A DNA stretch of 64,000 bases from Nageia nagi (GCA_050084985.1 JBITNC010000001.1:160828001-160892000); one strand, 5' to 3'; positions 9,374 through 42,770 are shown, counted from the first letter of the stretch. Notes: a model not told the origin generated them from the sequence alone. Program-made: numbers and translations.

Positions 9374-9503
9374 AGCTTTTTATTTGAAAAAGGACTTGAA
9401 AGATTGAGGGCATTTGACTTTGGAGGAGATATTGACTACACATGTGGATGATAATAATATAAGCATGTTTTCTTATTGTATACATGTTTTTAACTATATG
9501 CAT

Positions 9504-12682: not shown

Positions 12683-12689
12683 ACGCATG

Positions 12690-14072
12690 TGTATTCGTAT
12701 TTTGCAGACCTTGTAGGCACATGATGGAGGAAACTTTTTCAACACTATAGAGAATGAACATGGTTATACCATGGATAAGTTATGCTTATTTTATTATGTA
12801 CAAGGTACTAGGATCATGGAGAACGAGTATGGAAACTCAATGTATAAGGTATACATTTTTATAATGTACATGCATATTTTTTATTGTTTACATATTTTGA
12901 ATTATATGCATGTTGTAGACAATGTAGGCACATGATGTAGGATAAGATGCCAATACCATGGAGAATGAGCATAGCAATATCATGGATAAGGTATGCATGT
13001 GTGAGGTTGTATGCATATTTTTAATTGTATACATGTGTATTTATATTTTGTAAACCATGCAAATACAATATTCAAGAAAATATGTTAATACTATGGAAAA
13101 CGAGCATGGAGGAAAAGATGCTAGGATCATGGAGAATGAGAATGACAACACCATGGATAAGGTATGCATTTTTTTAGTATATTCATTTTTTGTTGTATGC
13201 ATGTTGTAAAAAATGCAAGCATAGGATGCAAGACAAGATGTCAGGAGCATGGATAAGGTATGCATAGTTTTTAGTGTATGCATATGCGAGGTTGTATGCA
13301 TATTTTTAATTGTATACATGTGTATTTTTATTTTGTAAATCATGTAGACACATGATGTAGGAAAAGATGCCAAAACCATGGAGAATGAGCATGACAATGT
13401 CATGTATAAGTTATGCATAGTTTTTAGTGTATACATGTGTGAGGTTATATGCATATTTTTAATTGTATACATGCATATTTATATTTTGTAAACCATGCAA
13501 ATACAAGATGTAGGACAAGATGTTAGGACCATGGAGAATGAGCATAGAGGAAAAGATGTTAGGATCATGGAGAACAAGCATGAAAACACCATGGATAAGG
13601 TATGCATATTTTTTAGTATATAAATATTTTTGTTGTATGCATATTTTTAATTGTATGCATGTTGTAAAAAATGCAAGCACAAGATGCAAGACAAGATGCT
13701 AGGAGCATGGAGAATGAGCATGGAAATACCATGGATAAGGTATGCATATTTTTTAGTGTATGCATATGTGAGGTTGTATGCATATTTTTAATTGTATACA
13801 TGTGTATTTGTATTTTTCAAACCATACAGACACAAGATGGAGGACAAGATGCCACAACCATGGAGAACAAGCATGGTGATGCCATGGATAAGGTATGCAT
13901 GTTTTGAACTGTATGCATATTTTTTTGTTGAATGCATATTTTTTACTATATGAATATTTTGAAATGTATGTTTGTGTATTTGTATTTTACAAACCATGCA
14001 GACACAGGATGGAAGACAAGATGCCAACACCATAGAGAACAAGCTTAACAATATCATGGAGAATGAGGTAGG
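12690..14072 (+). repeat. tandem exon-intron array (about 10 units) encoding a 24-aa acidic repeat
   Basis: Units read TTTTG(C/T)A(G/A)|ACCATG...ATGGATAAG|GTATGC. The nine complete exons are 72,72,108,48,72,108,72,72,75 nt, all multiples of 3. Consensus peptide ~TMQTQDGGQDATTMENEHGDTMDK. Confidence 0.85.
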
Positions 14073-14165
14073 CCTCGATATTCTCCAACATGGGATATTC
14101 TCCATAATTAATTGATATTTTATGGATATATTTGGATTACTCATATGTTATATGATATATTGTAA

Positions 14166-15041
14166 CAAGATGAAACAAGCAAGACTTTGCCAATTATTGA
14201 CACCATCCCACTTGGTTGGCAACAAAAATTATATACTTCTTGAGATGGAAGTTTGAATCTATTTGCATATGTATACTTTGCTTCATTTGACCAGTGGAGT
14301 AAATGTGCTAATGGGTCCAATGCTTGTACATCTTTAGTTGTGGTTATTGCTGAATGGTTATGGAAAAACCCAACTTCCTTACCCAAAAAATTAAAGTTTG
14401 AAAGATTGATAGAAGTTGGATCTGCATTATGAATAAAGTTATGTGATGAGTGGTCATTAAAAGATAAGTTTCCTAATGGGTATTTTGATCTAGAAATAGT
14501 CTTATCAATGAATATGCAACCTTTAACTATAAATCATTCTCACTCAGAACTTGGATTCTTTAAGGTGGAGAGATTAGAAGACAAAATCAATTTTCTTAAG
14601 GCATGCAAGATATATCATCAAATATGGGATGAAATCAAATAGAATTTAGATTCAAGTATTTACATTATAAGTTGGAGTGATCATTTTTTTGTTCTAAATG
14701 TTGATAGAGAAGCTTATTATATAATATATACCCTTGGAGAATGATTGTATGTTGGATGTAAGCATGCATATATCTTGAAGTTTGATAAGGAAACAAAAAT
14801 ATATTGACTACTTAATACAAAAAAAAAAAAGATGAAGAACAAACATATTTTGTGTAAAGGAATTGATTGTTGTGGATTTTACATGAAAGACATTTTAGCT
14901 ATTACAACCCCTTTAATCCAAGTAGAGACATATTTTAAGAATGGTAAGGTGGATGACATCTCACTAAAGCGACTGCAAATTGATTTCTTATCAATTGAGT
15001 TATCAATATTAATTTTAATTATTTTTAAACATACCTACTAA
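14166..15041 (+). pseudogene. C-terminal domain of plant C2 NT-type / At3g11760 (F26K24.5)-like family, putative cysteine-protease fold
   Basis: A single frame with scattered stops reads GWQQKLYTS*DGSLNLFAYVYFASFDQWSKCANGSNACTSLVVVIAEW...FPNGYFDLEIVL...IWDEIK...IYIISWSDHFFVLNVDREAYYIIYTLGE*LYVGCKHAYILKFD...CKGIDCC...RLQIDF. This matches the recalled family motifs ASIDQRS..GESACTALV, SWNDHFF, YYIIDTLGERL and RLQIEF. Confidence 0.85.
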
Positions 15042-15155
15042 GTATCCAAGTCTTTCTTTTTATAGGTTCTAAATTGATGTGAAATATTAAATAGTTGAAC
15101 TTGTTGAAATTGACATATTTATGAAATTGATGTGAAGTATCATTTTATTTTGTAG

Positions 15156-15443
15156 CCCACATAGAATCCTTCTCCTATGCAGCCACATGATCCAATATTT
15201 GAAGTGGAAGAAGTGGTGGACCTATTGGACAAACATGCAAAAAAAGTTGGGCTTGGCAAAGTGCACCAAATCGATCCAAATGGTCCTTACCATACTATAA
15301 ATATTGGTGAAGGTAACATTTTAGTATCAATATTGGAGTTAATTAAAAACTCTTATAAGCTACCCATCCCTAATGATGGGGCTGATAACCTTGGAGAGGC
15401 ATTAAATGGCTTTGTCCTTTGGCCAACCAAGTATTTGACTAAG
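15156..15443 (+). pseudogene. exon encoding Tnp1/En-Spm-like (Transposase_23-type) domain
   Basis: Bounded by TTTTGTAG and AAG|GTAAG. Reads VVDLLD..KVGLGKV..DP..NILVSI..LPIPNDGADNLGEALNGFVLWP, the LPxP..LGEA..VLWP signature of TnpA-related accessory proteins. Further small exons follow at ~15521-15676 and ~15761-15821. Confidence 0.7.
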
Positions 15444-15869
15444 GTAAGCATGTTTTGAATTTTTCTTTTAGATGTAAAGTTGAGGCAAATTTCTTATAAT
15501 TTTCTTTTGATTGTTGTTAGTGCCAGAAATCTAAAAACATCAAACCACTAAACTTTTCACAACATACCGAGATAAATCCTAATGAGATAAAAAAATCCAA
15601 CAAAGGCTCAATGGTGGATATACAATAATGTATCTATAAGCAAGAATAAAAAACCAAGAATTAAGACACTAAGAAAGTAAGTATATATTTAACAATTGAA
15701 TGCTCTATACATATTTATGGATATATTTGTAATTAATTATACTTTTACAAATTATTGGTAGATTTAGAGATTGCTAGTGCTTTTAGCAAGGCAACATATG
15801 TTGATAATGAAAGAGATTTATAAATATATTTTTAAATCATTATTTTTTTTTAATCAACAACTAAGAAAC

Positions 15870-16070
15870 TAAATTGTAAATTTGATACATAGTTGTAATT
15901 TTGATAGACAATGTATAAGGTTGATACAACTATAAATTTTGATCATGATGTACAAACTTTGATAAACAATGTACAAGGTTGATACAATTTTAATTTTGAT
16001 ACAAAATACAAGGTTGATACAATTGTAATTTTGATTGAAAATGTACAAGGTTAATACAAGTTGATATAGT
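15870..16070 (+). repeat. degenerate ~37-bp tandem repeat
   Basis: Repeated TTTTGATA(C)A..ATGTACAAGGTTGATACAATTGTAA units. Confidence 0.7.
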
Positions 16071-16479
16071 GACTTAAAGTTTTAAGTGTCTATTGAGTTT
16101 TTTCCATGTGTGAGATTCTTAGTATACTACTAAAATTTATCTCTTTGAAGTTGTATTTTTCATGATGGTTTGAAAAAAGTGAATTCTATATTTTTCATGA
16201 TGGTTAAAAAAAAATGAATTATGTATTCTTCATAATTGAAATTTGAAAAAAGACATAAATATCAATGGAAATGAGTACACAAAAAATCCTCTGTTATGTT
16301 AAGAATCTTTATTTTGTTAGAGCCTAAATATGCTCCATCCTCTATTGTATTTTTTTCATTATTGAAATTTGACAAAACTTTAAATATGAAAGGAAATGAG
16401 TATAAAAAAAATACCAACAGTTCTTCTTTCAAATAGAAAAAATGAATTTTTCTATAGGAATGGATTAAAGTACTCAATG

Positions 16480-17022
16480 TGAGACTATTTTTGTGGGATA
16501 GTCAACTATTTTTTGGGATAGTCTATTATTTCCATGGGATAGTCTAGTATTTCCGTGGGATAGTCTAGTATTTCTATGGGATAGTTGAGTATTTTATTGA
16601 TTATTTTCCATGCAATAGTCAACTATTTCTATGGGATAGTCTATTATTTCATTGCAATAGTAGACTATTTCTATGGGATAGTCATTTTTTAGAACTTATT
16701 GATATGTATATTCAACTATTTCTATGGGACAGTTGATTATTTATGTGGTCATTTATTTCTATGGGACCTAATATGTATTCGACTATTTCTATTGGATATT
16801 TGACTATTTTTATGGGATAGTCTATTATTTCAATGCGATAGTAAACTATTTTTGTGGGACTTATTGATATGTATATTCAACTATTTCTGAGGGATAGTTG
16901 ACTATTTATGTGGAATAGTCATTAAATTATTTGTTATCTAATATGTATTCGAATATTTCTATTAGATAGCTATGGGATAGTGGACTATTTCAGCCAGATA
17001 GTCAACTATTTATATGGGATAG
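16480..17022. repeat. ~20-bp minisatellite with palindromic core, left part
   Basis: Many copies of GGGATAGT(CA/TG/CT)ACTATTTC, consistent with an ancestral ATAGTCGACTAT palindrome decayed at CpG. Confidence 0.9.
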
Positions 17023-18071
17023 TGTAAACATCCCCAAAAAATATTTTTATCCAAACTATTAGAGGACCTAATCATTTGGATGACTGTGTAACCGTCTAGA
17101 CAACTACATAATCATTCAAATGATCTTGATTGTTTATTTTTATAAAAAGGTAGTTAAAACATCATTTTACAAATCTTAGTAATTTTTCATGAAATTTCTT
17201 GAGTTTACAGAGCACTTACAAAATAGAAATGAGCATGAATAAGCAACATTGATCACTCATCACCATCAATTAAGATTTCCACCATGGACTAGCATCTGCA
17301 AGGTTATCTCACACCACCAAAGGTGGATTAGAGGTATATTTCCTATGAATTATGAACATACATGCATGTATCTTGTTTATGTGAGGGTTTTGTAGGTTTT
17401 GGAGAGTTGAAAGAACACTTGTATCCTCCATTATAGCATAGATTTGCTTATTTACATATGTTTGTGTGACATTTAAGCATTCCTTAGGCTAATATAATTT
17501 TAGATTCAAATCATTGTAAATATCCATTATAATTGCATCTTTTTGTATATGTGAGCATACATTCTTGATCATTGTAGCACTATCATTATGTAAATCATAT
17601 TAGATATTAATTATGGCATAGATCTTGTGCTCATATCATTATCTTGATTATTTATTGGGTGTTGGCATACTTTAGGCTTAAATCATCCATAATTTATCAT
17701 TTATTATCACTTTTCACCATTCTTGTCACATCATTTAACATTTGTTAATATATCCATTTGAATGTGGAAAAGGGAGTCTACTTTCTCTTTGAGCTAGGGC
17801 TTGCCCTACTTTATTGGACATAAGATCTTAAGTACTTGTAGTTAGAGGCTTCCCTTTAACATATTTTATTTTTTAGGATTCCCTAGACATATCAAGAACA
17901 TCAAGAACAAGCCATTTCTCATATTTTCCATGATCATTTGAGCACAAAGATCAACTCTAGCAAACAAATATCAACTCTAGCAAAGATTTACTTAATAACG
18001 TCTTTAAACCTTGAGGTTTTGTTGTAAATGGTGCCCTAATCTCTTTTTTCAAGGATATTTTGATGTTTACA
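17023..18071 (+). repeat. 5' LTR of Gypsy element
   Basis: TGTAAACA...TGTTTACA inverted termini; homologous to 33449-34558. Confidence 0.95.
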
Positions 18072-18074
18072 AAA

Positions 18075-18092
18075 TGGTGATCATGGTGGGAC
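18075..18092 (+). promoter_or_regulatory. primer-binding site (non-Met, Tat-type, CpG-decayed)
   Basis: TGGTGATCATGGTGGGAC lies 3 nt after the LTR end and resembles a TGGCGACCA..-type PBS. Confidence 0.75.
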
Positions 18093-19619
18093 AATGCTAG
18101 TCCTAAAACCCCAAGACATAAGAGGATTCTTGAGCCTTTTACTTTATTTTTGGTGCTTTAAAGTTTTGGATATTTCTTGCAATTCAGAGAGACTTTGTCA
18201 TTAATTTCAACTATAATTTGTAAGGTACCTTACTGGGCATGGATAAAAATGAATCTAAAAACCTTGAAGTTCCACTATAGATAGAAAATAAATCATCCTT
18301 CAGCTTACCGATCTTGATTGTAAATCATCCTTTATAGGGATGATTTTCATGGTCCCCATATAGTTGGTTGATTTTGACTATAGAACTAGTTCTACTACTA
18401 TTTTAGCATTTTCTTGCATTTAGATCTTATATATAGTAGGGATAGTAGTCCACTGTTAGGTTTTTCCATACAATTTTGGGTGTCCTTATCATAGGATGCA
18501 TCTATTGCCATTGTCATAGGGTTTTTATTCATTTATTTTAGCTTTTTAATTTTAACTCTAAGTGCACCTATAGTTGTCTAAATGACTTCTGATCACCCAT
18601 ACGAATGGCACTGTTACCACAATCATCCCTGTAATGGAAGATCCTATGTTAGATTATTGTAAATTTTATTCAACCAACCAACTTGGAGTAGGAGGGAATG
18701 TTCTTGGGCCTAGTGAGTTTTTGAATTTCTTTATATACTTGGTTAATACTATTTGGTTTCTCTTTGCATATAGGATTTCCACTTCTCCTTAGTGAAATTT
18801 GCATTGAATTTTGGGGGAGTGGTGCATACACTTGGAAATCTTGTTTGGTGCTTCAAATTTACATCTTGAGCAAGGGTTTATTTTCTATTTTGGGTTTTCT
18901 TTATTGATTGTTTGATCAATAAAAAGAATTGCTATTTTTGAATTATCATTTATTTGAAAAGTAAAATACAAATCTTATTGCTTTAGCATCCTTGGGGTGG
19001 GAGTGTTTTGAATTTTATTTTGAAAAGCAAGCATTTGGGAGGTGTAATTGCATAGTATTGTCATATAGTATTGCATCTCATATTTTCTTTCTTGTACTAA
19101 AAGTACATCACAAGCTTAGGAAGTGACTAGGGTACATGGATTTCATCACCATAGCCTAACCCATACTTGGATTTCATTACCAAGGTGGAGGGGTATTTGA
19201 GACACCCTTGTAAAATGATCTACCCCCTAGAGATTGAACCTTACCCAAAAATACCTAACTAGATACATCTTTAGGAAAACTAAAAAGAGTCAGAATTTAC
19301 AATTGCACCTAAAATTTATTCACTAAGAAAATAATACTTCAAATTGAAAAAGGAGCAACTAAACAAGATAAAAACCATTGCTATTTATCATTACTACTTC
19401 TTATCACTTTTTTTATCTTTTAAGTAATCATTTAGGGTGTTTGGTGTTAAGTGCATTTACATTAAACAAGATTGTTAACAAAATTCTAGGCTCTTTACTT
19501 AGTGATCTACTATTGTAAGCATCATTTGATTTCATTGTATGCTTTTAAGTTTATTTAGGGTTCTTGTTTGATCTATCCTATTCCACATTTTTCATTCCAT
19601 TTGATCTACCCTTTTCATC

Positions 19620-22420
19620 ATGTCACATCCTCCTTTTGGGGATGAAAATCCTTGGCATGTTCATATGGCTAAGACTAGAGCTCACCATAGGGCTAGAGAC
19701 TTAAAAGAAGAGGAATGAGATAACCAAGAAAATCAATCACATCCTCTTCCCTATTCATAGATTTCTTATATTAGGTCACACACACCCCATCATTCATCTA
19801 CAAATGAACCCGCTTCAACATCACCACATCTTTCATTTTATCATACTTTAGCAAGGTTTTGTTTCTTTGAGGATACCCCTAGAAAGGAGGGACAAGATCA
19901 TGTGATGACTCGTAGGGCCAGCCTATATAGGATAGAAGATCATCTTTCCATAGAGATACCTTCTACCCATCATTAGGGATACACCCTTAGGATAATTCTT
20001 ACCATGTCTTGTAGCATGATTTAGATTATTATGTATCTAGACCATGAACTAGTATTGTCTACCTTCTAATCCATCCTTCTAAGCTACATCTATCTCCATA
20101 TGAGATGTTTTTGAGTGATCCTATGATTTAGGGCTTGTATAAAGAGTTTAAACAAGTTTAGGTCCATCTTTAGGTGCACCTAGTAGGGATCCTTCACCCC
20201 AACCACCTCCCATCATGGATGCCCTATAGCCTAAGGTTTGTCCCTATGATGGAGAGACATTAGATGGTCACATATAAGATGCCTCTTTATCCCCTATCAC
20301 TAGGTCACATCCTCTTCATCCCACCATATGATACATCATTGATGATCCCCCTGATACTTCATATTATGATGAGCCTTTATTATGTTCCATATCACCCCCA
20401 TATGTTAGAGCATCACATGGTTAACCCCTTTGCACCCTAGAACCTTCACATTTATATCCCATTAGGGTCCTTCACATCTTACTCTAGGTGGAATGCCTAG
20501 GTCCTCACCTTCATGCCTTACAAATCTTGACCCTCATGTTTTAGCATACCATAAGACTCCACCTCCTCCTAATGATTAGGTTGGGTATTACTATGATGAT
20601 ACTCATATTACAAACCAACCTAAACATCAACTTGTGTCTCATCTAGCGTATGATCCTGAGCTAGTTCACCATGTAGGTTCTCATCCTATCCATCATATCA
20701 TACCTCATATTCATGTCTATCATCTGTAGCTATTTAGTTAGTCTAGAGTACATTAATGATAGGGGCCTTCCTCACACTCAATCGATCTACCACCAAAACT
20801 ACATTATTCATCTTCTTCTTATGTGGTGGTGCCATATTGATAAACATACACACATTAGGCTATAGATCCTAATCATGTTTATGCCCATACTATATCCCTT
20901 GTACCCCATTCTGATCCTAGGTATGATGAGTCGTATTATCTTTCCGAAGCCTCTTCACATGGGCCCACTCGATTTCTTGGTCAACATGAGTTGTAGCATT
21001 CATCGACTAGAGGGGTTTGGGTCAAAATCCTCTAAACCTTGGACCCAAGGTAACATTCGATACACAACCTAGTTATGATTAGTCATATAAATAGGATCTA
21101 GATCCATATTATGATAATGAATATGACTAGTACAACCTATATGATGATCAACCCATTAGCATCATATCGCAATAGTAGGCTATAGTTAATACCCAACCTC
21201 TCATAGTAAAATTTGAGATCTTAAAGAGGTTGAAGGACATGGGGCTTAAATTTAGTGAACATGGAAAAGCCAAGTTGCCATACACTTTGATTTGTAATGA
21301 GCCTATTCACCCAAGTGTACCAACAAAGACCTTTACTTATAAGTTTGAGATACCTAAAATTGACAAGTTCAAAGGAAAGGAATATCATAAGGAGCACCTT
21401 TTTTAGTTTATGTATTCATGCTACATTATTAGTAATAATGATGTGCTTATGCTTAGGACCTTCCCTATGACATTAGTAGGCTAGGCTCTACATTGGTATA
21501 ACAACCTCTCACAACATAATATTTATTCCTTTGAATAATTTATCGATAAATTATTAGACCATTTTTCCATCAATATATAGAAAAGAGCTTCAATTACAAA
21601 CTTTAGAAAATGCTCATAGTTCAATGATGAGTCTATATCAAATTATGTATTTAGGTGGAGGGCCATTATCATAGATATTCCTTATCCTTTATTGCAAGAA
21701 GAGCTAGTCAAATTATTCTATAGGAGCTATAATAAGCATATATCCTCTATAATCATAATCCAACAACATCATACCTTTTAGGAGGCATTAGCTCAAGCTA
21801 AGTTAATAGAAGAGGCTAAGATCCAATATGGGGAAATCAAACTAAGAAAGAAATAAAACAACACTTAGAAGTACTAAATTAATGGAAATAAACTTAGTAC
21901 TTCATATCAAAAGCTATAAAATAATTTATGTATCTCATGAGGTATCACGAACATAACCAATCATTCAGTTAGCTCCATAAAGGCCACCTAGGGTCAATGC
22001 ACCATCACAACCATAGAATCAAGAAAGACCTAAACCAAATAATGAACAAAATAATCAATAATATCCATATAGGCCTAGGCAACCTTGATAGCAAGGGCCA
22101 CATAAACCTTGGATACCTTTGGCCAAACTTGTTGAGGTGTTCTCAAAAAGATTCTAAATACATAGTTAGTCACTCTCCCTAAGGTCAAACCAAAAGATCC
22201 AAATGTGGAGAAACCAATATTGTATAATGATAATGAGTATTACATTTATCATAGAAAAAAATACATGATACAAATAAATGCAATCAATTGAGGAATACCA
22301 TTTAGATACTAATAAATAATGAGAAAGTAATGATAGGAAATCCAATTGCTCAACCCAATCAAAACTTGGGTGTGTTTCAAGACCCCTTACCTAGACACAA
22401 TAATAATGTAAATAAGATCT
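19620..22420 (+). pseudogene. gag: Gypsy gag (Pro/His-rich N-terminus, retrotrans_gag core, Cys/His motif)
   Basis: Probable start MSHPPFGDENPWHVHMAKTRAHH; core KFEIPKIDKFKGKE..KEHL..LMLRTFPMTLVG*ALHWYNNL at ~21340-21510; QPNQNLGVFQDPLP at ~22350-22392. Many stops. Confidence 0.75.
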
Positions 22421-22989
22421 CATTAGATCTTACATAATAAGTTATACATGATTATAATCCAAGATAGAATAATGAATTCATGGGATTCATGAATGTAGAT
22501 TCATATTTTCCCTTTGTAAAAGGTATTGATATAACTCCATACTTTGAGTTTACAAGTGTCATCGACCCACCTCTGGCATATCAGGTTGTAGAGATACATG
22601 ATAGTAATATGATTGGCATGACCACCAATATAGGTCAAGGTAATGATAGAGAACCTCCTCCTCCCTATCAAGATGTAAGAATCCAACAAACATTAAATCA
22701 ACCTCAAGTATATATTTAAACATAACCTCTTAGATCCTTGTGACCATTTAGACTTAGTTAGAACAATAGCTCTAGACCACATAGACAAAATTTTCTTTAT
22801 GGGACTTATTGTAGCAATCAACTGAACATAGGAACACTTTGAATAATACCTTGATAGATATTAATTTATATGGTAAAAAACCTAATTCTTTTGGAGACTT
22901 CATAGGGGTTATTCAAAGTGCCACTAGGCCTAGCATCACCTTCTTCCATGATAAAATTTAGCATTCTCATCCTAATAAGCCAAAGCATT

Positions 22990-25900: not shown

Positions 25901-26470
25901 AATATTTTGAAGCATCTAATAAAACCATTATCATAATTCTAAATAACATGGTCAATGATAACCATAAAAATTGGTATGAATGCCTTCCCTATGCTTTTTG
26001 GGCTTATCGCACCAACATTAGGACACCCATAGGAGCTACCTTATTATCATTAGTCTATGGTGTCGAACTAGTCATACCCCTTGGGATAGAAATCTTGTCC
26101 CTTAGAGTTCAATTACAAGACCTCATTCTAGATGAGGAGGCTAGGAAGGCTCGATTAGACCAGCTAACCCTCCTATATGAATGATGGATTAATGCCATAC
26201 AACATCATAAGGTTTATTAGGAGTGATTGAAGTGAATATATAATAAAAATGTTTATCCCAAAGAGTTTAAAATTGGTTACTTAGAACTTAAGGAAAATTA
26301 GCAATAGTCACATCTTGAGAGGTCTTTACAAGATAAGTTTGCATCAAATTGGTTAGGGCCTTATATCATCAAGCAAAAATTTGGTATAGGTGCTTATCAT
26401 TTAGTAGATCTATAGGGTCAAGAGGAGATGGAGCCTATTGACATCCTTCATCTTCATCCATTCTACATTT
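22990..26470 (+). pseudogene. pol: Gypsy pol: protease, G-patch, RT, truncated RNase H, truncated integrase
   Basis: KRVLIDNGSTINV (protease ~23030); G-patch-like QGYSLSKYK*GL..LGF (~24100-24210); RT KDDFPLPNI, LSLMDGF, VMPFRLKNA, EEYVDDLL; IN GIPHKIISDNG, LPYAFWAYRT, NWLGPY. Confidence 0.92.
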
Positions 26471-29049: not shown

Positions 29050-31020
29050 CATGTCTACCTATCCACACCCCTATGGTGTGCTATCACCCTATCTCTTGTG
29101 TTGAATAAGGGGAGTGTTCATCCCCTTCTATCCCTCTACCTACATCTCTATCAGGCTACTCTCTCTCTCTCATGGCCTTGCTCTGACTAGTTGAGGGTGG
29201 TGACCTAAAAAATTGCCCAATGACTTGAGAAATGGCTCATCTAACAAACCCACCTACATCTACCCCTATCTTGCCACCTACCTCCATCCATATCATCATG
29301 GTTATCTCTACTATGGATAGCACTAGATGTCATACTAAGTGCCTCTCACTACGATGGCTCCTTATCATGCTATGAGACATGCTCCTTGCTATCGATGCTA
29401 CCCTAAAGGTCTCTAAGAACTTAGTACTACTACTCATACCACCTCTACCATTTCTTGTATAGCTAATACTATGATCTTAGTAGCCTTTTTTGTATCTAAT
29501 TGCATCACTACTAGGTCCATCTAGGCTTGCATCTTGCCCACATATACCTACATTGCATCATGCTTTGCTTATTATTGTGCCATTTAGGGGTTGAGCTCTT
29601 GCATCTCAAACTCTAGGGTCTTTCCCCTTAGCTCCCCTCTCTTTGGCTCATTCCCCTTTTGCTCTAGCTATCCAAAATATCCTCCTCCATCCTTAAATAC
29701 TCCTCCTCCTCTCCATCACCCTAAGCATCATCCTTGACCTCCCTCCTCATCCTCTTTGATCTCCTCATTTGCCACCTCCTCAAAACTTGGATTGACTCCT
29801 CCCTCAAGGACCCATGGTTCTATGATGGGAGCTCCCCTCTACCTCTCCATGATGAGCCACACATGTAGCTAGGTCTACTATGGGGCCCACTAGGTATCAT
29901 ACTTAGGCATGGTGCCCACATCATCCACTATTGCTTTGATTAAAGATGCATTTGGCATCACATCTAGATTAATGTACACTAACCCTATCCTAATCGGGGC
30001 ATTTCTATCCACCCTACCATATAAAACTAGCTCTAGTGGCACAACATGAATCAATCCAATTGGTATTAAACCCACTTGAATTTGAATATCTCCATATCCC
30101 TAATGTGGTATCCCCTGATGTATCTCATCCTAAAGGCACATACCAGCTACATGACATCCTCCACCCATACTTTCCCTCCCTGATTGGGATGATGAATGAT
30201 GTCATAGGGAGGAATTCCTACAAGCATATCTATGTACCAATTTGTGTTATCCCTCATGAGGGCATCTCCTAGGCCTCTCCTTCTCATGCTCCCAACATCG
30301 AGCATATGGAAACTCTATCCCTACAATTAGGGAGATGTCCCATCATCTTCAACCTATGTATGTCTACTAAAAGTATGTTTTTCCTCCCAAGATGAATCTG
30401 CTCCCATGTCCATATTTAGAGTAGGAGTGAGGTGCTCACATCTCACTATCCTTTAGCTATTATGGTTAGCTCTTTGCAAGTTTGTACTAGTAATGCTAGC
30501 CCCTAAGAATAAACTATGCTCTCAAGCACCATCCTCCTCACTACCTCAACCATTTTTTTAAGGGAACTTGGGTTTTAAGGAATCTAGAAAAATGAAAGAT
30601 GATATCAATAACATGGCTATCACCTCTCTCTATTCGAGGCATCCCTAATGATACATCATATCAATGAGCACCTCACCATTGTTGAGGTCCCACATCCTAT
30701 ACCCCTCTCTGACATACATTTTGATGACCATCCTATCTATAGCCATTGTGACTTTCTCTCCCTTGAGCGACACTCATAATATCCAATAGATGTCCTTGAG
30801 AGTCACTATCATCTCCCTTGTTTGGAGAAGAAAAGTGCATCGATTAGGGACAAAGTGCTCCCTGAGAGATATCATGTAGGAAGTATCTCTGTTAATAGGG
30901 AGAATCTTGGCTTCTCCTATGATCCCTACAATCTTTATCCAATCCTAATTTTCTTGGGTCAGTACAACTCTCACCTCTATCTAGAGCAATCAAAATTCGT
31001 GCCTAAGTTTCATATAGCAT
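29050..31020 (-). pseudogene. antisense extra ORF with aminotransferase-like plant mobile domain (PMD)
   Basis: Minus strand reads EHFVPNRCTFLLQTREMIVTLKDIYWIL*VSLKGE and FIFLDS...YS*GLALL...LLL*IWTWEQ, matching the PMD motifs TF....EMT.TL.D, YSWG.A.L and LLQ.W.WE. A purine-rich charged tail follows. Confidence 0.8.
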
Positions 31021-32654
31021 AAAGTTTGATGTATTAGTCTTTTATTTGTTTATCATGTCTATTGCTAAGTTAGGAGTCTCTATGTCTATGTTAGTCCTAT
31101 GTGTCACCTAAGATATCTTTTTGCATTTAATCTAAGTCATATTTTCAATTCTTTTCTTCACTTTTCTTTATAACAAAATCATCCTCTTAATGGGTGACTA
31201 GATTAACCTAGTCATCTAGATATTAGATGACTTTGTAGGTCATCTAAATAATTTTTATAATCATCCTTCATAAAGAATGACCCTCCAAATTAGATCATTC
31301 AAGATTAAAATGATTTGTATAGTCTAAAAATTGAAAAAAATAACATTATCAAGAGGATAATTTCAAATTGCAAATCTACATAAAAATTAAAACTTACATA
31401 TTATACAATAAAATTGGCTACTCTTCTATAATATCATAAATTTACGATTGGTTTTCCATTTACTATTTTATTTGTCGGTATCCCCTTTGTTATGTTTAAA
31501 CATGATAGGAGGATTCTTTCATTGTTTATGCTACTGCCTAGTGTCTGCAATCATTTCTTGCATTTGTTTGTTTTATTTTATCCAACTATGATGAATGGCT
31601 ACAACCACCATTCTCAAAATTCTTTGTCTATTGAAAAAACCCTTGCAATGTAATGATTATTCATATTTTTTCTAATTTTATAAATTCTACTAGGTGAGAT
31701 TTTTGTCATTATGTTTACCAACATGTGTTACTCTCCCCTCGTTATCCATAATCTTGTTGTTTTAACTATTTAAATTCATCAACAAAAGAGAGAAACAATA
31801 ACAAGGGTTTTCTTTTAAGCCTATGTTAATACAATTGGGTTTCATTTCTTATAACTACATGTTTAATCCTATGCTAAGAAAGCATTTATTTAATCCATTG
31901 TTCAAAATATGATAGAAAAACAAATGCGAACTTGCAAAGTCAAAGCACCAAAATAGAGGGCTTTCAAGTGTTAGGTGACCTACCTTCTTGGGGGAAGTTC
32001 TTCCCCACTGGATTGACCTCCTCCTAGTTTTGGTGCCTCCATGTGGTCTCATAATTGATTAGATTCCTATCAATAATCAGCTCACTATTGATCAAATAAG
32101 TCTTTCTATATTATCATCCACTTTGTCAGTTTCTAAGAAATGATAAACTAGCAGGGTCATAGTAAATAGTCTCAAGCTCCACACAATCATAGTAAACAAC
32201 TTTCATAGTAATAGTGCTCTTTAAACACCAAAATCCAACAGTCAAAATGATTCACAATCAAGTCAATTTTATCTTTTTATTTTTCTTTTTAACCTTAATT
32301 GGATCATCCATATGATTCTTAAATGCCTAGATGATTTGATAAACCCTAGTCATATGGATGATCCTTAATCATTCAAATGATTTTCTTGGTCTATGTGGTA
32401 CTTTATAACACCTCTAGTCATGCTCATCATTTCTTGTTCTATTCAATCAAACCATCAAACATCTTATCTTATCATCCATCACACCTTCCCATTTAAGGGG
32501 GAGAAATTCACACATGATTTTAAACTAATCAAATTTTTGCATTTTAAAAGGTACATCATTGACATCATTAGGGGCATGTTAGATGTATGGTCAATCTTTC
32601 TTTCATCATGAATGTTCACTAGATGATTATTATCTCGATATTATGGACTAGTAA

Positions 32655-32880
32655 TAACATATTTTGACATCATCATGCCTAATATTGTCACTTTAAGTTG
32701 ACATGATAGATTGGCAATCATCATAATTTGACATCATCATGTTTGATATGGTCATTATAGCTCATCATGGTGGATTATCAATAAACACATTCTAACATCA
32801 CCATGTTTGATATTATCAGCTCAACATGATATGATTGATTTTTGATCAACATACTCAGATTTCATCATGTTTAGCTTAGT
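32655..32880 (+). repeat. ~64-bp tandem repeat in Gypsy 3' region
   Basis: GACATCATCATG-type cores at ~32665, 32730, 32794 and 32858. Confidence 0.6.
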
Positions 32881-33435
32881 CATTCTTGTGCAAGCATCAT
32901 ATGCTTGCATGCTATGATCCCATGCTTGGTAGGTATGTGTGTCTTGATCATTTCCCTTCAAATTCTAGGAAAAAGTAGATGTAGACACCCTTTAACTGTT
33001 GGAGCAAAGCAAAGATCATTCCCTTTAAGTATTGGGGAAAAAAAGAGATCATTTCATGTTCAATACTTAGATTAGATTAAATTAAAGTTTTGTTTTACTG
33101 TTATAATGGTCACTTGGTCTACATGTCATATTTTTATTACAAGTCCATTAGCATGAGATCCAATCCTTTCTTATATGACCTATCATCCATAAAAACTAGA
33201 CTTTATGGGATCCTCATGGTGCTCAATTTCATCTTATACAACCTATCATGTGCTAAAACCAAATAGGGATCGAGTGATTAGGATGATCTTATATGACCTT
33301 TCATGTATTGAAAATAGATCTCATCTTGATCATTTTGCTATCATATATCATTTATCATTATCAACTATCATTATCAGTTTACCATTTAACCTTGTACTTC
33401 TGTACTTAGCTTCTCACAGGTTTGAAGCTCACAAC

Positions 33436-33448
33436 AAAAAGGGGTAAC
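33436..33448 (+). promoter_or_regulatory. polypurine tract
   Basis: AAAAAGGGGTAAC immediately before the 3' LTR. Confidence 0.8.
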
Positions 33449-34558
33449 TATAAACACCTCCAAAATATGTTTTTAACCAAACTATTAGAGGACCTAATCA
33501 TTCTAAAGACTGTGTAACCATCCAAATGACTATGTAATCATTCAAATGATCTTGACTATTTATTTTTTAAAAAAAGTAGTTAGGACACCATTTTGCAGAT
33601 CTTCATAATTTTTCATAGAATTTCCTAAGTTTTCAAAGCAGTTATAGAGAAAAAAAGAGCATAAACAAGTAACATTGAGTACTCATCACCATTAGTTAGG
33701 ATTTTGCAAGAAATCCACCATGGAATAGCATTTGCAAGGTTATCTCACACCACCAACGGTGGATTGGAGGTATCTTTCTTGTGAATGAATTATGAACATA
33801 CATGAATGTATCTTGTTTGTGTGAGGGTTTTGTAGGTTTTGAAGAGTTGAAAGAATACCTGTATCCTTATTATATCATAGATTTTCTTATTTACATATGT
33901 TTGTGTGACATTTAAGGATTCCTTAGGCGAATATCATTTTATATTCAAATCATTATAAAGATCCATTATAATTGCATCTTTTGGTATATGTGAGCATACA
34001 TTCTTGATCATTGTAGCACTATCATTATGTAAATCATATTAAATATTGATTATGGCATAGATCTTGTGTTCATATCATTATCTTGATTATTTTTGGGTGT
34101 TGGCATGGTTTAATCTTAAATCATCCATAATTTATCATTTATTATCACTTGTCACCATTCTTGTCACATCATTTAGCATTTTTCAATATCATTTATTATT
34201 AAAAATAGGTAAATAGCATATCATATTGCATTTATGCATAATTTCTTATCTTCTTTCCATCCATTTGAATGTGTAAAAGGGAGTCTACTTTCTCTTTGAG
34301 CTAGGACTTGCCCTACTTGATTGGATATAAGTTCTTAAGGGCTTGTAGTTAGAGGCTTCCTTTTAACATAGTTTATTTTGTAGGATTCCCTAGACATATC
34401 AAGAACATTAAGAACAAGCCATTTCTCATCCTTGCCATGATCATTTGAGCACAAATATCAACTATAGAAAAGATTTAGTTAATAATCTTTTTATACCTTG
34501 AGGTTTTTTTGTAAATGGTACCCTAACCTCTTGTTTGAAGGATCTTTTGAGGTTTATA
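33449..34558 (+). repeat. 3' LTR of Gypsy element
   Basis: Homologous to the 5' LTR. Termini decayed to TATAAACA...GGTTTATA; carries an extra block near 34190-34255. Confidence 0.95.
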
Positions 34559-34563
34559 GATAG

Positions 34564-34765
34564 TCATTTGTTTTTGTGGGACTTAATAAGACTATTTCAG
34601 TGGGATAGTTGACTATTTATATGGGATAGTTGATTATTTATGTGGGATAGTCTATTACTGCAATGCAATAATAGAGTATTTCACTGAATTGTGATATGAT
34701 TATTTATGTATTATAGTCTATTACTATAATGAGATAGTTTACTATTTCTATGGGATAGTCAACTT
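34564..34765. repeat. ~20-bp palindromic minisatellite, right part
   Basis: The same GGGATAGTTGACTATTT units resume immediately after the TSD. Confidence 0.9.
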
Positions 34766-36465
34766 ATTTTCTAGGTCAAGAAAGTTATAATTTGCTATAG
34801 TTTTATTATTTTGAATAATTTTTTATCATCAACTAATGATCATTTCATACTTAGTAAGCACTAATCAAAATGAAATGAAACATGGATTCCATTCAACCTG
34901 AAAGCATGTATGGATCATTATTCGGTAATATATAAATCTTTGGGATCAACTTACATGTATATGAAAAGATCAAATTTAATGTTGATATAAATAATGGATG
35001 GCAATCAATTAACATTCAAAATTTTAATCACTACACATTCATTCATGATATGGTACTAGTACATATTCAAAATGGTGTACAACATTTACCACATTATAGT
35101 ATGGGTCTTCAAAAATAAATTGATAATCAATCTCAAGGTCTTTAGAAGATTACATTGTACACAAACATATTTTCTACTCCCTACTTCTATCTATATCTAT
35201 TTCTCTTTCTCTATCTAAATCTACATCAAAGCTATGTTTGCAAGCCTTTTTGGCTCTTAAAATTGGAGGAAAACTTGCATTCAACATGGATGGTAAAGAA
35301 CACCTTCTAACTGAAATTCGATCAACCAAATCTCTTGTACATTTAATACTTGATCATGTGATTTATGGCAGCCATTCCCTTAAATTGATCACATGTTGCC
35401 TTAAAAATTTGAGCCAAATATTGTAACAAAATATCACCTACTTCCAAGGATAAAGTGCATTCAACTAGCTCAATCAATTTACACTTTCTTAATGTTGTTC
35501 GTTTAACCTCTGCTTCACTCAATTTGGTATAAACATCACTTTTTCCTTCAACTTCACTAATGGTACGTTGTTCAACCTAGATTAATGAGTGTAATAAATA
35601 TTATTTTAGATTGATATAAACTCTACAAGACATAAAATTAAAATAATTTAAACATACATCAAGTGGATTCCTATCAATCTAGTTGTCCATACTAACATCT
35701 TGCCATTTAACAAGGTTCAATTAAGAAACATAAATAACTCACAAAAGCATATATTTAAAGTATTTTAAAAAATATAGTGAACAAAGTATAGAAAATATCT
35801 TATCCAAGTTCTAATTATATCTCCTTTTCTTGTATATTTTGTGGGTTCTTATCAATCGAGTACTCTATACTATCATTATGCCATCATTCTTGTTATTAAA
35901 CATTTGACATTAGCTACATACAAACAATAAATTAAGAATAACAAAAAAAAATTAAAAACATATAATCATATCATTTAAAAAAATATAGTGAAAAAGGGCA
36001 CTCACAAGTGTCTCATTTCTTAATCTTTCTCACATCAAGTTTACCTTTATCATATGTTTGCATAGGTATCCTTGTTGTGAAAAAGGGCACTCACACATTT
36101 TGAATTTGGGATTGATTTGAAAAACTCTATATGCCTTTCAATCATCACTTTGACTTTGAACCCATGCATGTGTTGGCTCGGTATGGTAAAAAGTGACATA
36201 GATATCTAATATTTTTTTTCCTTGCACCATAATAGATTCTCAATCTTTTCAACCCTTATGTTGTGGTAAAAACTATTTTCCTTAAAATTTTGTGTCCATA
36301 GTAATGAACATACACAATAGTTTTCAAATTATGAACAAGCCAATCAACCCTCCTATGAATTGCAATAAAAATAGATTTTAACCATACATACTTCAAATGT
36401 GAGTGGTATGATTCAATGGCTTGATTTGTTTCTTGGACAACATGGGGCATGGTATGACAACATTT

Positions 36466-36969
36466 TGAGATAATTAAATTGTAACAAGAACAATCTTAAA
36501 CTACAAATATCACATGAAAGGTCTCATTCACATCCAACAAACTCACAAATAAGATAATCTCACAAAGTAACTCAAGATGTAAAGTGGTTCCTCCAACTAG
36601 GAGTACATCCACTAACTAGATCTTTACTTCAATCACAAATACAACTCTCTTACAATCCTTCTAATCTCAACTCCTACACTTCTATCCTATAGCATAACTT
36701 TACTCCATAATTGGTATGTGACCACAAAGAGGGAGCCTTCTATTTATAGGCCAAAATCCCTCTTTGGATCACCCTTTTATCTAATGTACAAAAGCATGAC
36801 ATGCACATCCTTTTACCCAAGGGGCATGCTCATGACATGGAGTGTAGGACAAGTTACATTATCATATTCACTTAAATACTTAAGGTATAAAATGATACCC
36901 TTAAGTATTAATGAATATACATAGAAGATTTAATACAAACTTTACAATAATGCATTATACATTCCAACA
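36466..36969 (-). mobile_element. solo LTR of Copia family
   Basis: TG...CA termini and TSD CATTT (36461-36465, 36970-36974). Homologous to the LTRs at 56218-56723 and 61856-62354. Removing it restores the transposase frame. Confidence 0.93.
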
Positions 36970-37247
36970 CATTTTGCCTACATGCCTATCCTACCAAGCC
37001 AACTATCATTGAAGTATTTCACAAATGTCTCTTCTTTTTATTGTTTTGGAAGCTTGATTATGGAGGTGGTTGCATCATCCTCATTTGAAGATGTATGCAT
37101 AATCTCACCTAACTATTTAAATATCTCTTGATGACATACATCATCCTTGACTTTGGCTATAAGATTTTTTAGCCATGCTCGAAGAACATGCCAAATGCAT
37201 AAATACACCTCACATTTAAATGCCTCTCCATTTCAAATGCATAAAAT

Positions 37248-37700
37248 CTATTACTAAAAAGGTTTTTTTAAAAATGCTATATAAGTTTTTAAGCAAATAT
37301 GATTGTTAGATGTAAAGCCAAACTTTGCAACATTTGCTAGCATTCTTCCAACATATGCCATGATGGGAGATGTAGAATAAGGTATAGTTTAAAATGATTT
37401 TGCATTGAATATTTCTATTTTGAATGCCCCAATATACATGTATGAAAAATGTAGAAGAAAAAATAAGAACTAAAAATTATTTGAAAATATGCATGATGAA
37501 ACATAGTTTTATTGACTGTAATGATTATAAGATATGCACATAAAAGGTTTTCTAAAAAAGGCTCTACAAAATTTTAGACAGATGCAAGTGTTAAGTGTAA
37601 AGGAAAAATATGCAACCTTTTCCATCATTCTTCCAACATATTCCACCATGTAACATATTTTAATTGACTATAATGATCATATGATATGCATAAATAATGT
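37248..37700 (+). pseudogene. PPR gene fragments inside transposase intron (antisense)
   Basis: Reads VFKQI*LLDVKPNFATFASILPTYAMMG, NAPIYMYEKC, KLFENMHDE and FRQMQVLSVKEKYATFSIILP. Confidence 0.8.
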
Positions 37701-39561
37701 TGTCACATCCCAACATACAACTAATTTCAAATATTGAATTAATAAAAGAAAATATTTAGAATATTAAATGAATAAAAGGAAATATTTATAATATTACCTA
37801 ATGGAATTGATCTCTATTGTGGAATCATATACCATGAATGCATTCAACATCCATGTAGGCTCATGTACAAGAACTTTGGTCTTGATTTTCTCCATCCATT
37901 GCTTAATATTTGAACTACATGCGCTAGAACAAATCACCTAAGAAATAGGAATCCCATTATGGTAGGTGTTAAATGCTAACAATATGTACAGCATAAACTT
38001 CATTTTATTGGTTTCGAATGTTGAATCTATAACTATCAAATTGTTATGTTCATACTTTATCATCCACTCTAGTTGTTCTAGTATTTGAATGCCCAAACCA
38101 AATGGCTACTCAACTTCTTGACTCTCCCCACCATGATACTCTTCATAGTGGAAAATTTTATCTTGATTAACACCTTACCAAATTAGAATGCTTTATGCAT
38201 CATTCTCATGGAACATGAACACCTTCTATTTCAAATTCTTTTAAAGATTGAGAATGTCCTTCTTAGTGAGAAAGTCATCTCTATTTGTTTTGCCTTTAAA
38301 TAATGTAATTTTTTCATGAACCATATTTTGATGCTTTTTGTGAATAACATCTACTAGTAATTCTAATAAGAGTAAATTTTGAACCCACTCAAGAAAACCT
38401 TTACTAAGATGCGGAGCATGGTATGCTCTAGTACCTTTAAAATTGCCAATCCTTTGCCCATGGCAAATTTTTCCATCTTGATCAACATGTTCCATTTCTA
38501 AGTAGGTTAACAATGCTAGATGAGGTTTCTTAGTAAGAATTTTAACACTAAAGTGATATTGAAATCCTTGTATGATGTGCTTTCTACTAGGTATACTATT
38601 GGCCCCTTTCTTCGGCCTATTATCTTCCTCATATCATACTTTAATGGCATCGATTTCTCTAAAATCCTTGTTTCCATATGAACACCAATATCTAAAAGAA
38701 TTACAAATTTTGAATATGTACAATTAAAACTTTGATTACATGTAAAGTATTAGATTATGATGCAAAAACATATTATAGTAAAACACAATATATTAAAGTA
38801 GATGACTTATTGAGTATAATTGAATGACCTATCCACCCATATGCATTCCCCTTCTTAGGATCTAACTTAATGATAGTATGTTAGTTTTCAAAACTTGTTG
38901 GACATATGGAAAACTTAGATTCTCCTTTAATGAAATTAGCAATTTGAATTTGTTCATCTCTTTCTTGATTTCCCAACACCATTTCCCATTGAATATGGTC
39001 ACGAAAAAACATTCTAACAAGAGGTTCATTTAGTGGGAGAGAGTTAATTATGTTCCACTTTCGTACCATGCTTGCTAGGTTGGCATAAAAAAGAATTCAA
39101 TTATACAATCTTTAAAGCCTTTTAGGAACCACATGCACTTGCACAATGCATATAACTAAAACATATTTATTATTTCAATATGGGGTACAAATGAAAAATT
39201 GATCATAGAAACACTTACTCCTAGGATTGCAACACAGTGCAAACCAATTAGGAAAAGCATACACCCAACTATATGAGGAGGATAAACTAAAGAGATTGGA
39301 ATCAAAATTTGTAAGAGAATTTGAAATGTAGGATAATATGATATTTTCTTTTTACTGAATGTGAAAGTATTCTTCAATATTCAATCAACTATATTTTATT
39401 AATATGCTTGCTACATGATTTATTTATCTTTGAATTTTTAAATTATAAATCTCTCCTTAAGATATTGGTCATTTGTCATTGTAGTGGCATTTGGATGTTT
39501 TTGGATATATTTTACTCTATAAGCTATTATTTTATCACTTGATGTTTATTTTGCATAAAAG

Positions 39562-42720: not shown

Positions 42721-42770
42721 TTATAAAAATCATCATGAACTAACTTATACATTTAATAAAAAAACTTACC

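What the first reader, a model, noticed from the sequence alone, without database searches (positions are those of the whole stretch)
12690..39069. Candidate new two-gene MULE: SWIM-type transposase facing a mosaic accessory gene that carries a putative non-ULP1 cysteine protease
Seen: after removing the Gypsy insertion (TSD GATAG) and the solo LTR (TSD CATTT), the region collapses to a plus-strand spliced gene (micro-exon repeats, then At3g11760-like domain, then Tnp1-like exon), a palindromic minisatellite, and a convergent minus-strand MULE-SWIM transposase. Known: maize MuDR has convergent mudrA/mudrB with intergenic repeats, and Kaonashi-type MULEs and some CACTAs carry ULP1 proteases. 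Inference: this is one element family whose accessory gene has recruited a different host domain in place of ULP1, possibly for anti-silencing or transposase regulation. I know of no description of this combination, but I could not locate TIRs or a TSD, so the linkage is unproven.
Basis: partly seen in the sequence, partly recalled or inferred. Interest (0 to 1): 0.85.

Follow-up and report, generated by a model that had tools for sequence, protein, structure and literature searches.

The report
Dead Mutator transposon carrying a deubiquitinase
This is a long-dead, retrotransposon-riddled copy of a plant Mutator-like transposon region in which a transposase gene faces a decayed, membrane-anchor-less copy of the recently described DUC ubiquitin-cleaving enzyme, a cargo not yet reported for plant transposons; the physical linkage of the two genes is likely but unproven here.

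Summary
A Ty3/Gypsy element (17023-34558, TSD GATAG) sits in a 21-bp dyad-repeat minisatellite, and a solo LTR (36466-36969, TSD CATTT) splits a minus-strand MULE/SWIM transposase. The plus-strand "At3g11760-like" domain (14181-14987) is a full-length catalytic domain of the DUC K63-deubiquitinase family (tblastn E to 3e-59).

It is dead: it has five in-frame stops, the catalytic Asp is now Tyr, and there is no C2 domain. Once that is removed, the tandem array and an upstream ORF (8906-9370) join the unit.

The "Tnp1-like" and "micro-exon" readings found no support. The plus-strand part is multi-copy: 529 diverged short contigs of another sequencing run tile all of 12690-17022.

I found no TIRs or TSD, and no external DNA was available to test the DUC-MULE linkage directly. 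The only DNA transposases in the window are two MULEs; no CACTA or Helitron protein was detected.

This scan had already found the same pairing on other DNA of this genome (s1-846858, s1-860984, and further unchecked notes).

Verdict: probably one decayed two-gene MULE, a new variant of protease-carrying MULEs.

The parts
8906..9370 (+). Open frame of 155 codons from ATG. It is Cys/His-rich, then Lys-rich. Candidate first exon or N-terminal part of the accessory gene; identity unknown.
   Evidence: Stop-free frame. It is contiguous with the tandem array once the nested LTR element is removed. No Pfam family, no homologue and no Atlas hit.
9454..9502 (+). Left edge of the 140-190-bp tandem array, cut off from the rest by a nested LTR element.
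   Evidence: Matches the array's 18-bp GTATGCATATTTTTAATT-type sub-repeats at many places in 12867-13952 (best E=6e-7).
9503..12682 (+). LTRs at 9503-10862 and 11289-12682; the interior is only 426 bp.
   Evidence: 1.4-kb direct repeats, 82% identical. TG..CA ends and TSD ATGCA (9498-9502) / ACGCA (12683-12687).
12688..14072 (+).
   Evidence: Exon-like and intron-like parts are equally conserved between units. Multi-copy in run X1.
14181..15041 (+). Pseudogene of a stand-alone DUC-type deubiquitinase catalytic domain in a single frame. Homology runs 14181-14987; the terminal stop is at 15039. Cys in GSNACTS and His-Phe in SDHFF are kept. The catalytic Asp position is Tyr. In-frame stops at 14241, 14430, 14640, 14742 and 14805.
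   Evidence: tblastn of DUC-family proteins, E to 3e-59, 40-48% identity over about 265 aa. phmmer of the 62-aa piece against 1.84 billion proteins gave 107 hits, and the C2-bearing ones carry NT-C2. Frame and stops. Comparison with IIDTLGERL of the relatives.
15165..15445 (+).
   Evidence: Sequence. Only a weak sub-threshold Pfam hit (Nodulin_C, E=0.0016). No homologue among proteins of 53-170 aa. Repeated in X1 and X2 contigs (records 4, 5, 12-14).
16486..17022 (+). Left part of the intergenic 21-bp minisatellite. The unit is about GACTATTTCTATGGGATAGTC, with a 6-bp dyad, and all units point the same way.
   Evidence: The motif ATGGGATAGT has 23 matches against 6.5 expected, and 17 of them lie in the two halves of the array (16486-17023, 34600-34759). 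This is the deepest part in X1.
17023..34558 (+). Nested Ty3/Gypsy LTR retrotransposon (17.5 kb), decayed.
   Evidence: LTR pairs. RVT_1 and RT_RNaseH_2 pieces followed by an integrase-like piece. TSD GATAG.
34564..34775 (+). Right part of the same minisatellite.
35346..39096 (-). Decayed MULE-type transposase with a SWIM finger. An N-terminal 130-codon open piece lies at 38244-38633. Core motifs are DSTFETNK (37941-38105), YDSTIEINSI (37797-37937), CIWHVLRAW (37116-37232) and ETNQAIESYH (36259-36465). The SWIM CxC..CxH is at 36033-36137. It carries 17 stops in the 506 codons of 38633-37116, a frameshift before SWIM, and an internal 285-bp duplication.
   Evidence: A protein 83% identical over 45% of the query (80 aa) exists in a Logan assembly (P0125).
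36466..36969 (+). Solo LTR inserted in the transposase coding region.
   Evidence: TG..CA ends, TSD CATTT at 36461-36465 and 36970-36974. Two more copies lie at 56236-56724 and 61858-62338. Excision restores frame f0.

Best explanation
The region 8.9-39.1 kb is one old, dead copy of a multi-copy two-gene Mutator-like DNA transposon, later broken by three LTR-element insertions.

Gene 1 (minus strand) is a MULE DDE transposase with a C-terminal SWIM zinc finger.

Gene 2 (plus strand, convergent) is an accessory gene. Its recognisable core is a stand-alone catalytic domain of the plant DUC deubiquitinase family without the C2 membrane anchor. It is preceded by a Cys/His- and Lys-rich frame and a tandem array, and followed by a further exon-like frame.

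The 3' ends of the two genes face each other across about 750 bp of 21-bp dyad-symmetric repeats.

Shown here: the domain identities, the decay of both genes, the nested insertions, and the multi-copy state of the accessory half.

Inferred: that both halves move as one unit. Also inferred is what the accessory protein did in active ancestors. Lacking C2, it would have acted off the membrane, probably in the nucleus. It may have been guided by its N-terminal part to the element's own repeat array, trimming ubiquitin from chromatin, repair or silencing factors to favour transposition. That would make it a functional analogue of the ULP1-bearing VANC/Kaonashi genes of VANDAL MULEs and of the VTD/OTU deubiquitinases of animal Helitrons. 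This copy can do nothing.
For: DUC identity: with the preprint.

No C2, ULP1, CACTA or Helitron protein anywhere in the window outside the Gypsy; the only DNA transposases are two MULEs.

Transposase identity.

The minisatellite is one continuous array split only by the Gypsy TSD, so the two gene ends were about 2.8 kb apart before that insertion.

Multi-copy: 529 short contigs of run X1 and 46 of X2 tile all 30 bins of 12690-17022. Most are 80-95% alike, and overlapping pieces run from the upstream spacer into the DUC domain and from the downstream exon onward.

Other copies carry TGG (the family's conserved Trp) where this copy has TGA at 14430.

Leads from this scan, not my own tests: s1-846858 (followed up as 'dead deubiquitinase gene inside a Mutator transposon') starts about 5.7 kb beyond the start of s1-846868, a 2.6-kb SWIM transposase between TIRs, which leaves a gap of about 3.1 kb. 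The same pairing is noted at s1-844077, s1-860979 and s1-856471.
Against: No TIRs and no 9-11-bp TSD could be found, even after allowing for the nested insertions.

Only the accessory half was laid on reads; the copy number of the transposase half rests on one protein hit.

A second, MuDR-like MULE transposase lies 6 kb to the right (44.8-46.1 kb), so this is a TE-dense spot where chance adjacency is easier.

The stop at 14640 is also a stop (TAA) in the 6 other copies seen. The deubiquitinase may therefore have been broken already while the family spread, which fits passive cargo as well as a working accessory gene.

No RNA or splicing evidence exists for a single mosaic gene.
Confidence: 0.6

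Rival explanations
1. Chance nesting. The DUC-bearing repeat (array, DUC, downstream exon, perhaps the minisatellite) is a separate, possibly non-autonomous, repeat of another class. It merely lies beside an unrelated dead MULE/SWIM transposase in a TE graveyard.
For: No common ends were found. The region has at least five other TE insertions and a second MULE. Many X1 and X2 contigs share only 16294-16346 and then run into different, mutually consistent sequence (loose ends), so the spacer is mosaic. One scan note reads a DUC copy as Helitron-borne.
Against: The same minisatellite runs from the accessory side to within about 570 bp of the transposase's last open piece, with no break other than the Gypsy TSD. 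No other transposase class is present in the window. Several other loci of this genome were noted with the same pairing, and one has similar spacing (not verified by me).
Confidence: 0.27
2. Linked but passive cargo. The DUC domain was picked up Pack-MULE-style or as a retrocopy, and was never a working accessory gene of the element.
For: The domain is a single uninterrupted frame limited to the catalytic part. The stop at 14640 is a stop in all 6 other copies seen. No homologues were found for the flanking frames that would show a conserved multi-domain protein.
Against: The complete ~265-residue catalytic domain was captured with its natural C-terminal end, not a fragment. Other copies are closer to the family consensus at several codons (Trp at 14430, Gly at 14571). 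Earlier follow-ups report copies keeping the catalytic His (not verified by me). The separate, convergent gene layout differs from typical Pack-MULE fragments.
Confidence: 0.3
3. A single-copy host DUC pseudogene (retrocopy or decayed paralogue) that happens to lie next to transposons.
For: It is homologous to host DUC genes. No close protein relative exists in the databases; the best is 55% over 60 residues.
Against: 5-9 distinct diverged contigs cover each DUC position in half of one run, and 529 contigs cover the 4.3-kb stretch. There is no C2 exon. This scan noted many further copies in the same genome.
Confidence: 0.03

Closest known systems
Kaonashi / VANDAL-type MULEs with a ULP1 (SUMO protease) domain fused to VANC (Arabidopsis, melon, rice, grapevine)
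   Same: A Mutator-like element with an extra gene that carries a captured papain-fold, ubiquitin-like-modifier protease. TIRs can be absent. Tandem short motifs in non-coding DNA are bound by the accessory protein (review PMC13317346).
   Different: The protease here is DUC-type (ubiquitin, K63-specific in the host enzymes), not Peptidase_C48/ULP1. No VANC homology was tested. The transposase is SWIM-bearing. Function and binding are only inferred.
Maize MuDR (mudrA/mudrB)
   Same: Two convergent genes with a repeat-containing intergenic region; a MULE transposase.
   Different: There is no mudrB similarity. MuDR has about 200-bp TIRs and 9-bp TSDs, and neither was found here.
Host DUC deubiquitinases (AtDUC1-3: At2g25460, At3g11760, At5g04860), bioRxiv 10.64898/2025.12.04.692294
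   Same: Homologous catalytic domain, with Cys and the His-Phe gatekeeper at the aligned positions.
   Different: No N-terminal C2 domain, multi-copy and diverged, and a pseudogene (5 stops, Asp replaced by Tyr). The preprint mentions transposons only for the VTD family and says nothing of transposon-borne DUCs.
VTD and OTU deubiquitinase domains of animal Helitrons/Helentrons (PMC9741609)
   Different: A different transposon superfamily and kingdom, a different active-site order (Cys-Asp-His in VTD), and a domain embedded in the RepHel protein rather than in a separate gene.

Membership tests
DUC deubiquitinase family | Sequence homology across the ~270-300-residue papain-like catalytic domain | tested here: met
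   tblastn E to 3e-59, 40-48% identity over 260-270 aa at 14208-14987. 107 family hits with the 62-aa piece.
DUC deubiquitinase family | Cys-His-Asp triad with an aromatic gatekeeper after His | tested here: not met
   Cys (GSNACTS) and His-Phe (SDHFF) are present, but the Asp position of IIDTLGERL reads Tyr (IIYTLGE*). This is a loss in this copy, not evidence against descent.
DUC deubiquitinase family | N-terminal C2 (NT-C2) lipid-binding domain, as in all embryophyte host members | tested here: not met
   No NT-C2 Pfam hit among 118 frames of the window. Full-length C2-bearing DUCs match nothing outside 14172-14987.
DUC deubiquitinase family | K63-specific deubiquitinase activity | not testable with these tools
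   This copy is a pseudogene, and activity would need an intact family member.
Mutator-like element (MULE) | MULE-type DDE transposase core | tested here: inconclusive
   Sub-threshold Pfam hits: ZSWIM1-3_RNaseH-like E=0.006 and MULE E=0.024, on a 55-aa piece. The motifs DSTFETNK, YDSTIEINSI, CIWHVLRAW and ETNQAIESYH stand in the canonical order. The pieces could not be joined for a tool search.
Mutator-like element (MULE) | SWIM zinc finger downstream of the core | tested here: met
   PF04434, E=1.6e-6, 28 bits against a cut-off of 19.6, at 36033-36137 (-).
Mutator-like element (MULE) | Terminal inverted repeats | tested here: not met
   No significant inverted pair flanks the unit. Non-TIR MULEs exist, and decay or further insertions may hide the ends.
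Mutator-like element (MULE) | 9-11-bp target site duplication | not testable with these tools
   The ends are undefined in this copy, and no other copies could be fetched.
Kaonashi/ULP1-bearing MULE | Peptidase_C48 (ULP1) domain in the accessory gene | tested here: not met
   No such Pfam hit in any frame of 58 aa or more outside the Gypsy. The protease domain is DUC-type.
CACTA (En/Spm) element | TNP2-type transposase or a TNP1 domain | tested here: not met
   No Transposase_21/23/24 hit. The 'Tnp1-like' exon has no significant match.
Ty3/Gypsy LTR retrotransposon (nested insert 17023-34558) | LTR pair, 5-bp TSD, and RT, RNase H, integrase order | tested here: met

The most novel reading that the evidence does not exclude
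A family of plant Mutator-like transposons has swapped the SUMO protease (ULP1) seen in VANDAL/Kaonashi elements for a nuclear, C2-less DUC-type ubiquitin protease. In active copies, this accessory protein would bind the element's own 21-bp dyad repeats and remove K63-linked or histone ubiquitin to escape silencing or to steer repair after excision. This would be a third, independent recruitment of a YopT/VTD/DUC-clan deubiquitinase by a mobile element.
Probability: 0.15. Interest if true: 0.8.

Novelty: new variant of a known kind. Interest (0 to 1): 0.5.

Why it matters
Protease-carrying plant transposons are so far known only with ULP1 (SUMO protease). Deubiquitinase-carrying transposons are known only from animal Helitrons. 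A MULE family carrying the catalytic domain of the just-described DUC deubiquitinases would show that plant transposons also recruit ubiquitin proteases.

It would add a membrane-free branch to a family described as strictly C2-anchored. It would also give a handle on why mobile elements repeatedly acquire enzymes that remove ubiquitin-like modifiers. This particular copy is dead and has no defined ends, so its value is as one more locus that supports and extends the architecture: an upstream frame, a tandem array and an intergenic dyad-repeat array.

Tried and rejected
- **The look-up of encoding contigs:** it was closed, so the neighbours of C2-less DUC proteins (P0108, P0123) could not be inspected.
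- **Public collections:** The search for related loci with the 130-aa transposase piece, and an exact minisatellite pattern, found nothing in metagenome contigs.
- **The search for homologous proteins:** no hit for the 'Tnp1-like' exon or for ORF 8906-9370. There was one 80-aa hit for the transposase piece.
- **PDB sequence search:** nothing found for two DUC pieces.
- **ESM Atlas:** it gave only implausible kinase look-alikes for the transposase piece and nothing for ORF1. I rejected these.
- **TIR hunt:** I used self-BLAST at several sensitivities, allowing for the nested inserts, and found nothing significant next to the unit.
- **TTAA|CCCT lead:** the end motif from s1-856447 gave one match, at 50147-50154, beside a small ACCCTA-motif cluster. 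There is no left partner.
- **Micro-exon reading:** no excess conservation of the exon-like parts.
- **Rfam:** no match in the window.
- **Tree of DUC domains:** the window copy has a very long branch (2.09) next to fern DUCs. It is too unstable to name a donor, and the careful search did not finish.
- **The search of earlier findings by sequence:** blank.
- **Joining of pieces:** The only read-through was inside a script, with X at each stop, for the tree.


Full report
**Setting.** The window is AT-rich plant DNA (about 30% G+C) and is packed with decayed transposable elements. Long bacterial-style ORFs are almost absent. I therefore worked from stop-to-stop frames and searched the pieces separately by reference. 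The only read-through was inside a script, with X at each stop, for a tree.

**Nested insertions.**
- The 17.5-kb element at 17023-34558 has LTRs about 85-87% identical. It carries RVT_1 and RT_RNaseH_2 pieces followed by an integrase-like piece, which is the Ty3/Gypsy order. It has a perfect 5-bp duplication GATAG.
- This element sits inside a 21-bp minisatellite that continues on both sides (16486-17022 and 34564-34775). The repeat units all point the same way. Each holds a 6-bp dyad (GACTAT..ATAGTC), and the motif is essentially confined to this array.
- The solo LTR at 36466-36969 has TG..CA ends and a perfect CATTT duplication, with two further copies in the window. Deleting it with one duplication copy puts the flanking transposase pieces back into one frame.
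Its 1.4-kb LTRs are 82% identical, its ends are TG..CA, and its duplication is ATGCA/ACGCA.
- The 49 bases to the left of that element match the sub-repeats of the tandem array to its right. The array therefore really starts near 9454, directly downstream of an open 155-codon frame (8906-9370). The unit begins at least 3.8 kb to the left of the reported start.

**The protease-like domain.**
- The frame 14181-14987 is a full-length catalytic domain of the family that contains At3g11760. A 62-residue piece found 107 proteins among 1.84 billion. Those proteins align to the window over 260-270 residues at 40-48% identity, with E down to 3e-59. The long ones carry an NT-C2 domain.
- A December 2025 preprint names this family DUC. 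It shows that AtDUC1-3 and a moss member are K63-specific deubiquitinases with a papain fold, a Cys-His-Asp triad and a Phe gatekeeper. It also says that all embryophyte members have an N-terminal C2 domain, and that the nearest structural neighbour is a Helitron-borne VTD deubiquitinase of zebrafish. An earlier follow-up in this scan (s1-860984) led me to that paper. I checked the homology myself.
- The window copy keeps the Cys (GSNACTS) and His-Phe (SDHFF). It has five in-frame stops and reads Tyr where relatives have the catalytic Asp of IIDTLGERL.
- No C2 domain lies anywhere in the window. It is therefore a dead, C2-less, stand-alone copy, not an intact one as a sibling note suggested.

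**The rest of the plus-strand 'gene'.**
- The segment 15165-15445 is open and has AG and GT borders. It gave no TNP1 or other significant Pfam hit and no homologue.
The micro-exon idea therefore has no support beyond splice-like dinucleotides.
- ORF 8906-9370 is Cys/His-rich and then Lys-rich, but it has no detectable relative.
- A single spliced mosaic gene remains a conjecture.

**The transposase.**
- On the minus strand, the pieces from 38633 down to 35346 carry the usual order of MULE motifs. These are DSTFETNK, YDSTIEINSI, CIWHVLRAW and ETNQAIESYH, followed by a SWIM CxC..CxH finger.
- The SWIM finger passes Pfam's cut-off (E=1.6e-6). The core gives only sub-threshold hits to ZSWIM1-3_RNaseH-like and MULE, on a 55-residue piece.
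- The gene is badly decayed. It has 17 stops in 506 codons, a frameshift before SWIM, an internal 285-bp duplication and the solo LTR.
- One 80-residue protein from a Logan assembly, 83% identical over 45% of the query, shows that at least one other copy exists somewhere.

**Is the accessory half repeated?** Yes. Two runs shared a few words with 14100-15500. When I laid their contigs on 12690-17022 at 80% likeness, 529 short contigs of X1 and 46 of X2 matched. They covered all 30 bins in X1. Most were 80-95% alike, and 5-9 distinct contigs lay over each DUC position in the half of the run that was read. Overlapping pieces run from the spacer into the DUC domain (14114-14412), and from the downstream exon on to 15846. 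The other copies read TGG, the family's conserved Trp, where the window has the stop TGA at 14430. At 14640 they also have a stop (TAA against TAG). The 'single-copy' refutation therefore fails, but the deubiquitinase may already have been broken in the lineage that spread.

**Are the two genes one element?** I could not settle this.

For linkage:
- The genes converge on one continuous repeat array, and their ends were about 2.8 kb apart before the Gypsy insertion.
- No CACTA, Helitron, hAT or Harbinger protein, and no ULP1, is present in the window. The only DNA transposases are this MULE and a second, MuDR-like one at 44.8-46.1 kb.

Against linkage:
- No inverted repeats or duplications bound the unit.
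- The neighbourhood is TE-dense.
- The spacer holds a 50-bp island (16294-16346) that many other copies share in a different context.

This scan's own notes list the same pairing at other places in the genome. Note s1-846858 was followed up as a dead deubiquitinase inside a Mutator transposon. It starts about 5.7 kb beyond the start of s1-846868, a 2.6-kb SWIM transposase between TIRs, which leaves a gap of about 3.1 kb, similar to the 2.8 kb here. Notes s1-844077, s1-860979 ('~13.7-kb two-gene MULE') and s1-856471 ('C2H2 finger plus NT-C2-family C-terminal domain') describe the same layout. One note instead calls a copy Helitron-borne (s1-858766). These are leads from similar readers, not independent proof.

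**Comparison with what is known.**
- A 2026 review of gene capture by plant transposons lists only ULP1 as a protease domain on MULEs (Kaonashi/VANC). It describes how VANC proteins recognise short repeated motifs in their own elements to lift methylation.
- Deubiquitinase domains (VTD, OTU) are known on animal Helitrons.
- The DUC preprint mentions transposons only in connection with the VTD family, and a text search found no paper linking DUC to transposons.

The combination therefore appears undescribed in the literature I could search, although this scan has already met it. I file it as a new variant of a known kind, a protease-bearing MULE. I put about 0.6 on the one-element reading, 0.27 on chance adjacency, and a small remainder on other readings, including the single-copy host pseudogene (0.03). 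Whether the cargo ever worked is a separate question. I put 0.3 on passive cargo, and that figure overlaps the one-element reading. The anti-silencing or pro-transposition role, and binding to the 21-bp dyad array, are inference by analogy only.

Noticed in passing
window 44834-45910 (+): A second, different MULE transposase of the MuDR/MURA kind. Its Pfam MULE hit (E=4e-4) is on 45203-45445, and typical downstream motifs follow. It lies 6 kb to the right of the SWIM-type one.
   Followed up: partly
window 42364-43134 (-): Open frames with a PPR-like look by eye (…NTLIHMYAK…) lie between the two MULEs. Pfam gave no hit. They recall a scan note (s1-844106) about MULEs loaded with antisense PPR fragments.
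   Followed up: partly
window 49904-50154: A small cluster of telomere-like ACCCTA motifs on the minus strand. It ends in the window's only TTAACCCT (50147-50154) and may be an end of the MULE family described in s1-856447. No partner was found on the left.
   Followed up: partly
window 399-513 and 53426-53544: An inverted pair about 70% identical over 119 bp (E=2e-5). The borders are not sharp. It could be two copies of a small repeat, or the ends of something very large.
   Followed up: partly
window 16294-16346: A 50-bp island that many X1 and X2 contigs share. Beyond it, on both sides, they run into different but mutually consistent sequence, so this piece also belongs to a more abundant repeat family.
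   Followed up: no
window 56236-56724 (+) and 61858-62338 (-): Two more copies of the ~490-bp LTR seen as a solo LTR at 36466-36969. They lie in opposite orientation around Copia-type frames (RVT_2, Pol_BBD, SH3_retrovirus; integrase-like frame at 59290-59571).
   Followed up: no
window 39723-40046: A young 159-bp tandem duplication (97% identical), just beyond the 5' side of the SWIM-type transposase.
   Followed up: no
window 37257-37365 and 37542-37650: A 285-bp-spaced internal duplication (76% identical) inside the transposase. It repeats a …YVGRM..VA.F.FT.N.ICLK…KPF segment.
   Followed up: no
window 15872-16072: A further tandem array (18- and 35-bp units, TTGATACAA..GTACAAGG) in the spacer between the downstream exon and the 21-bp minisatellite.
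   Followed up: no
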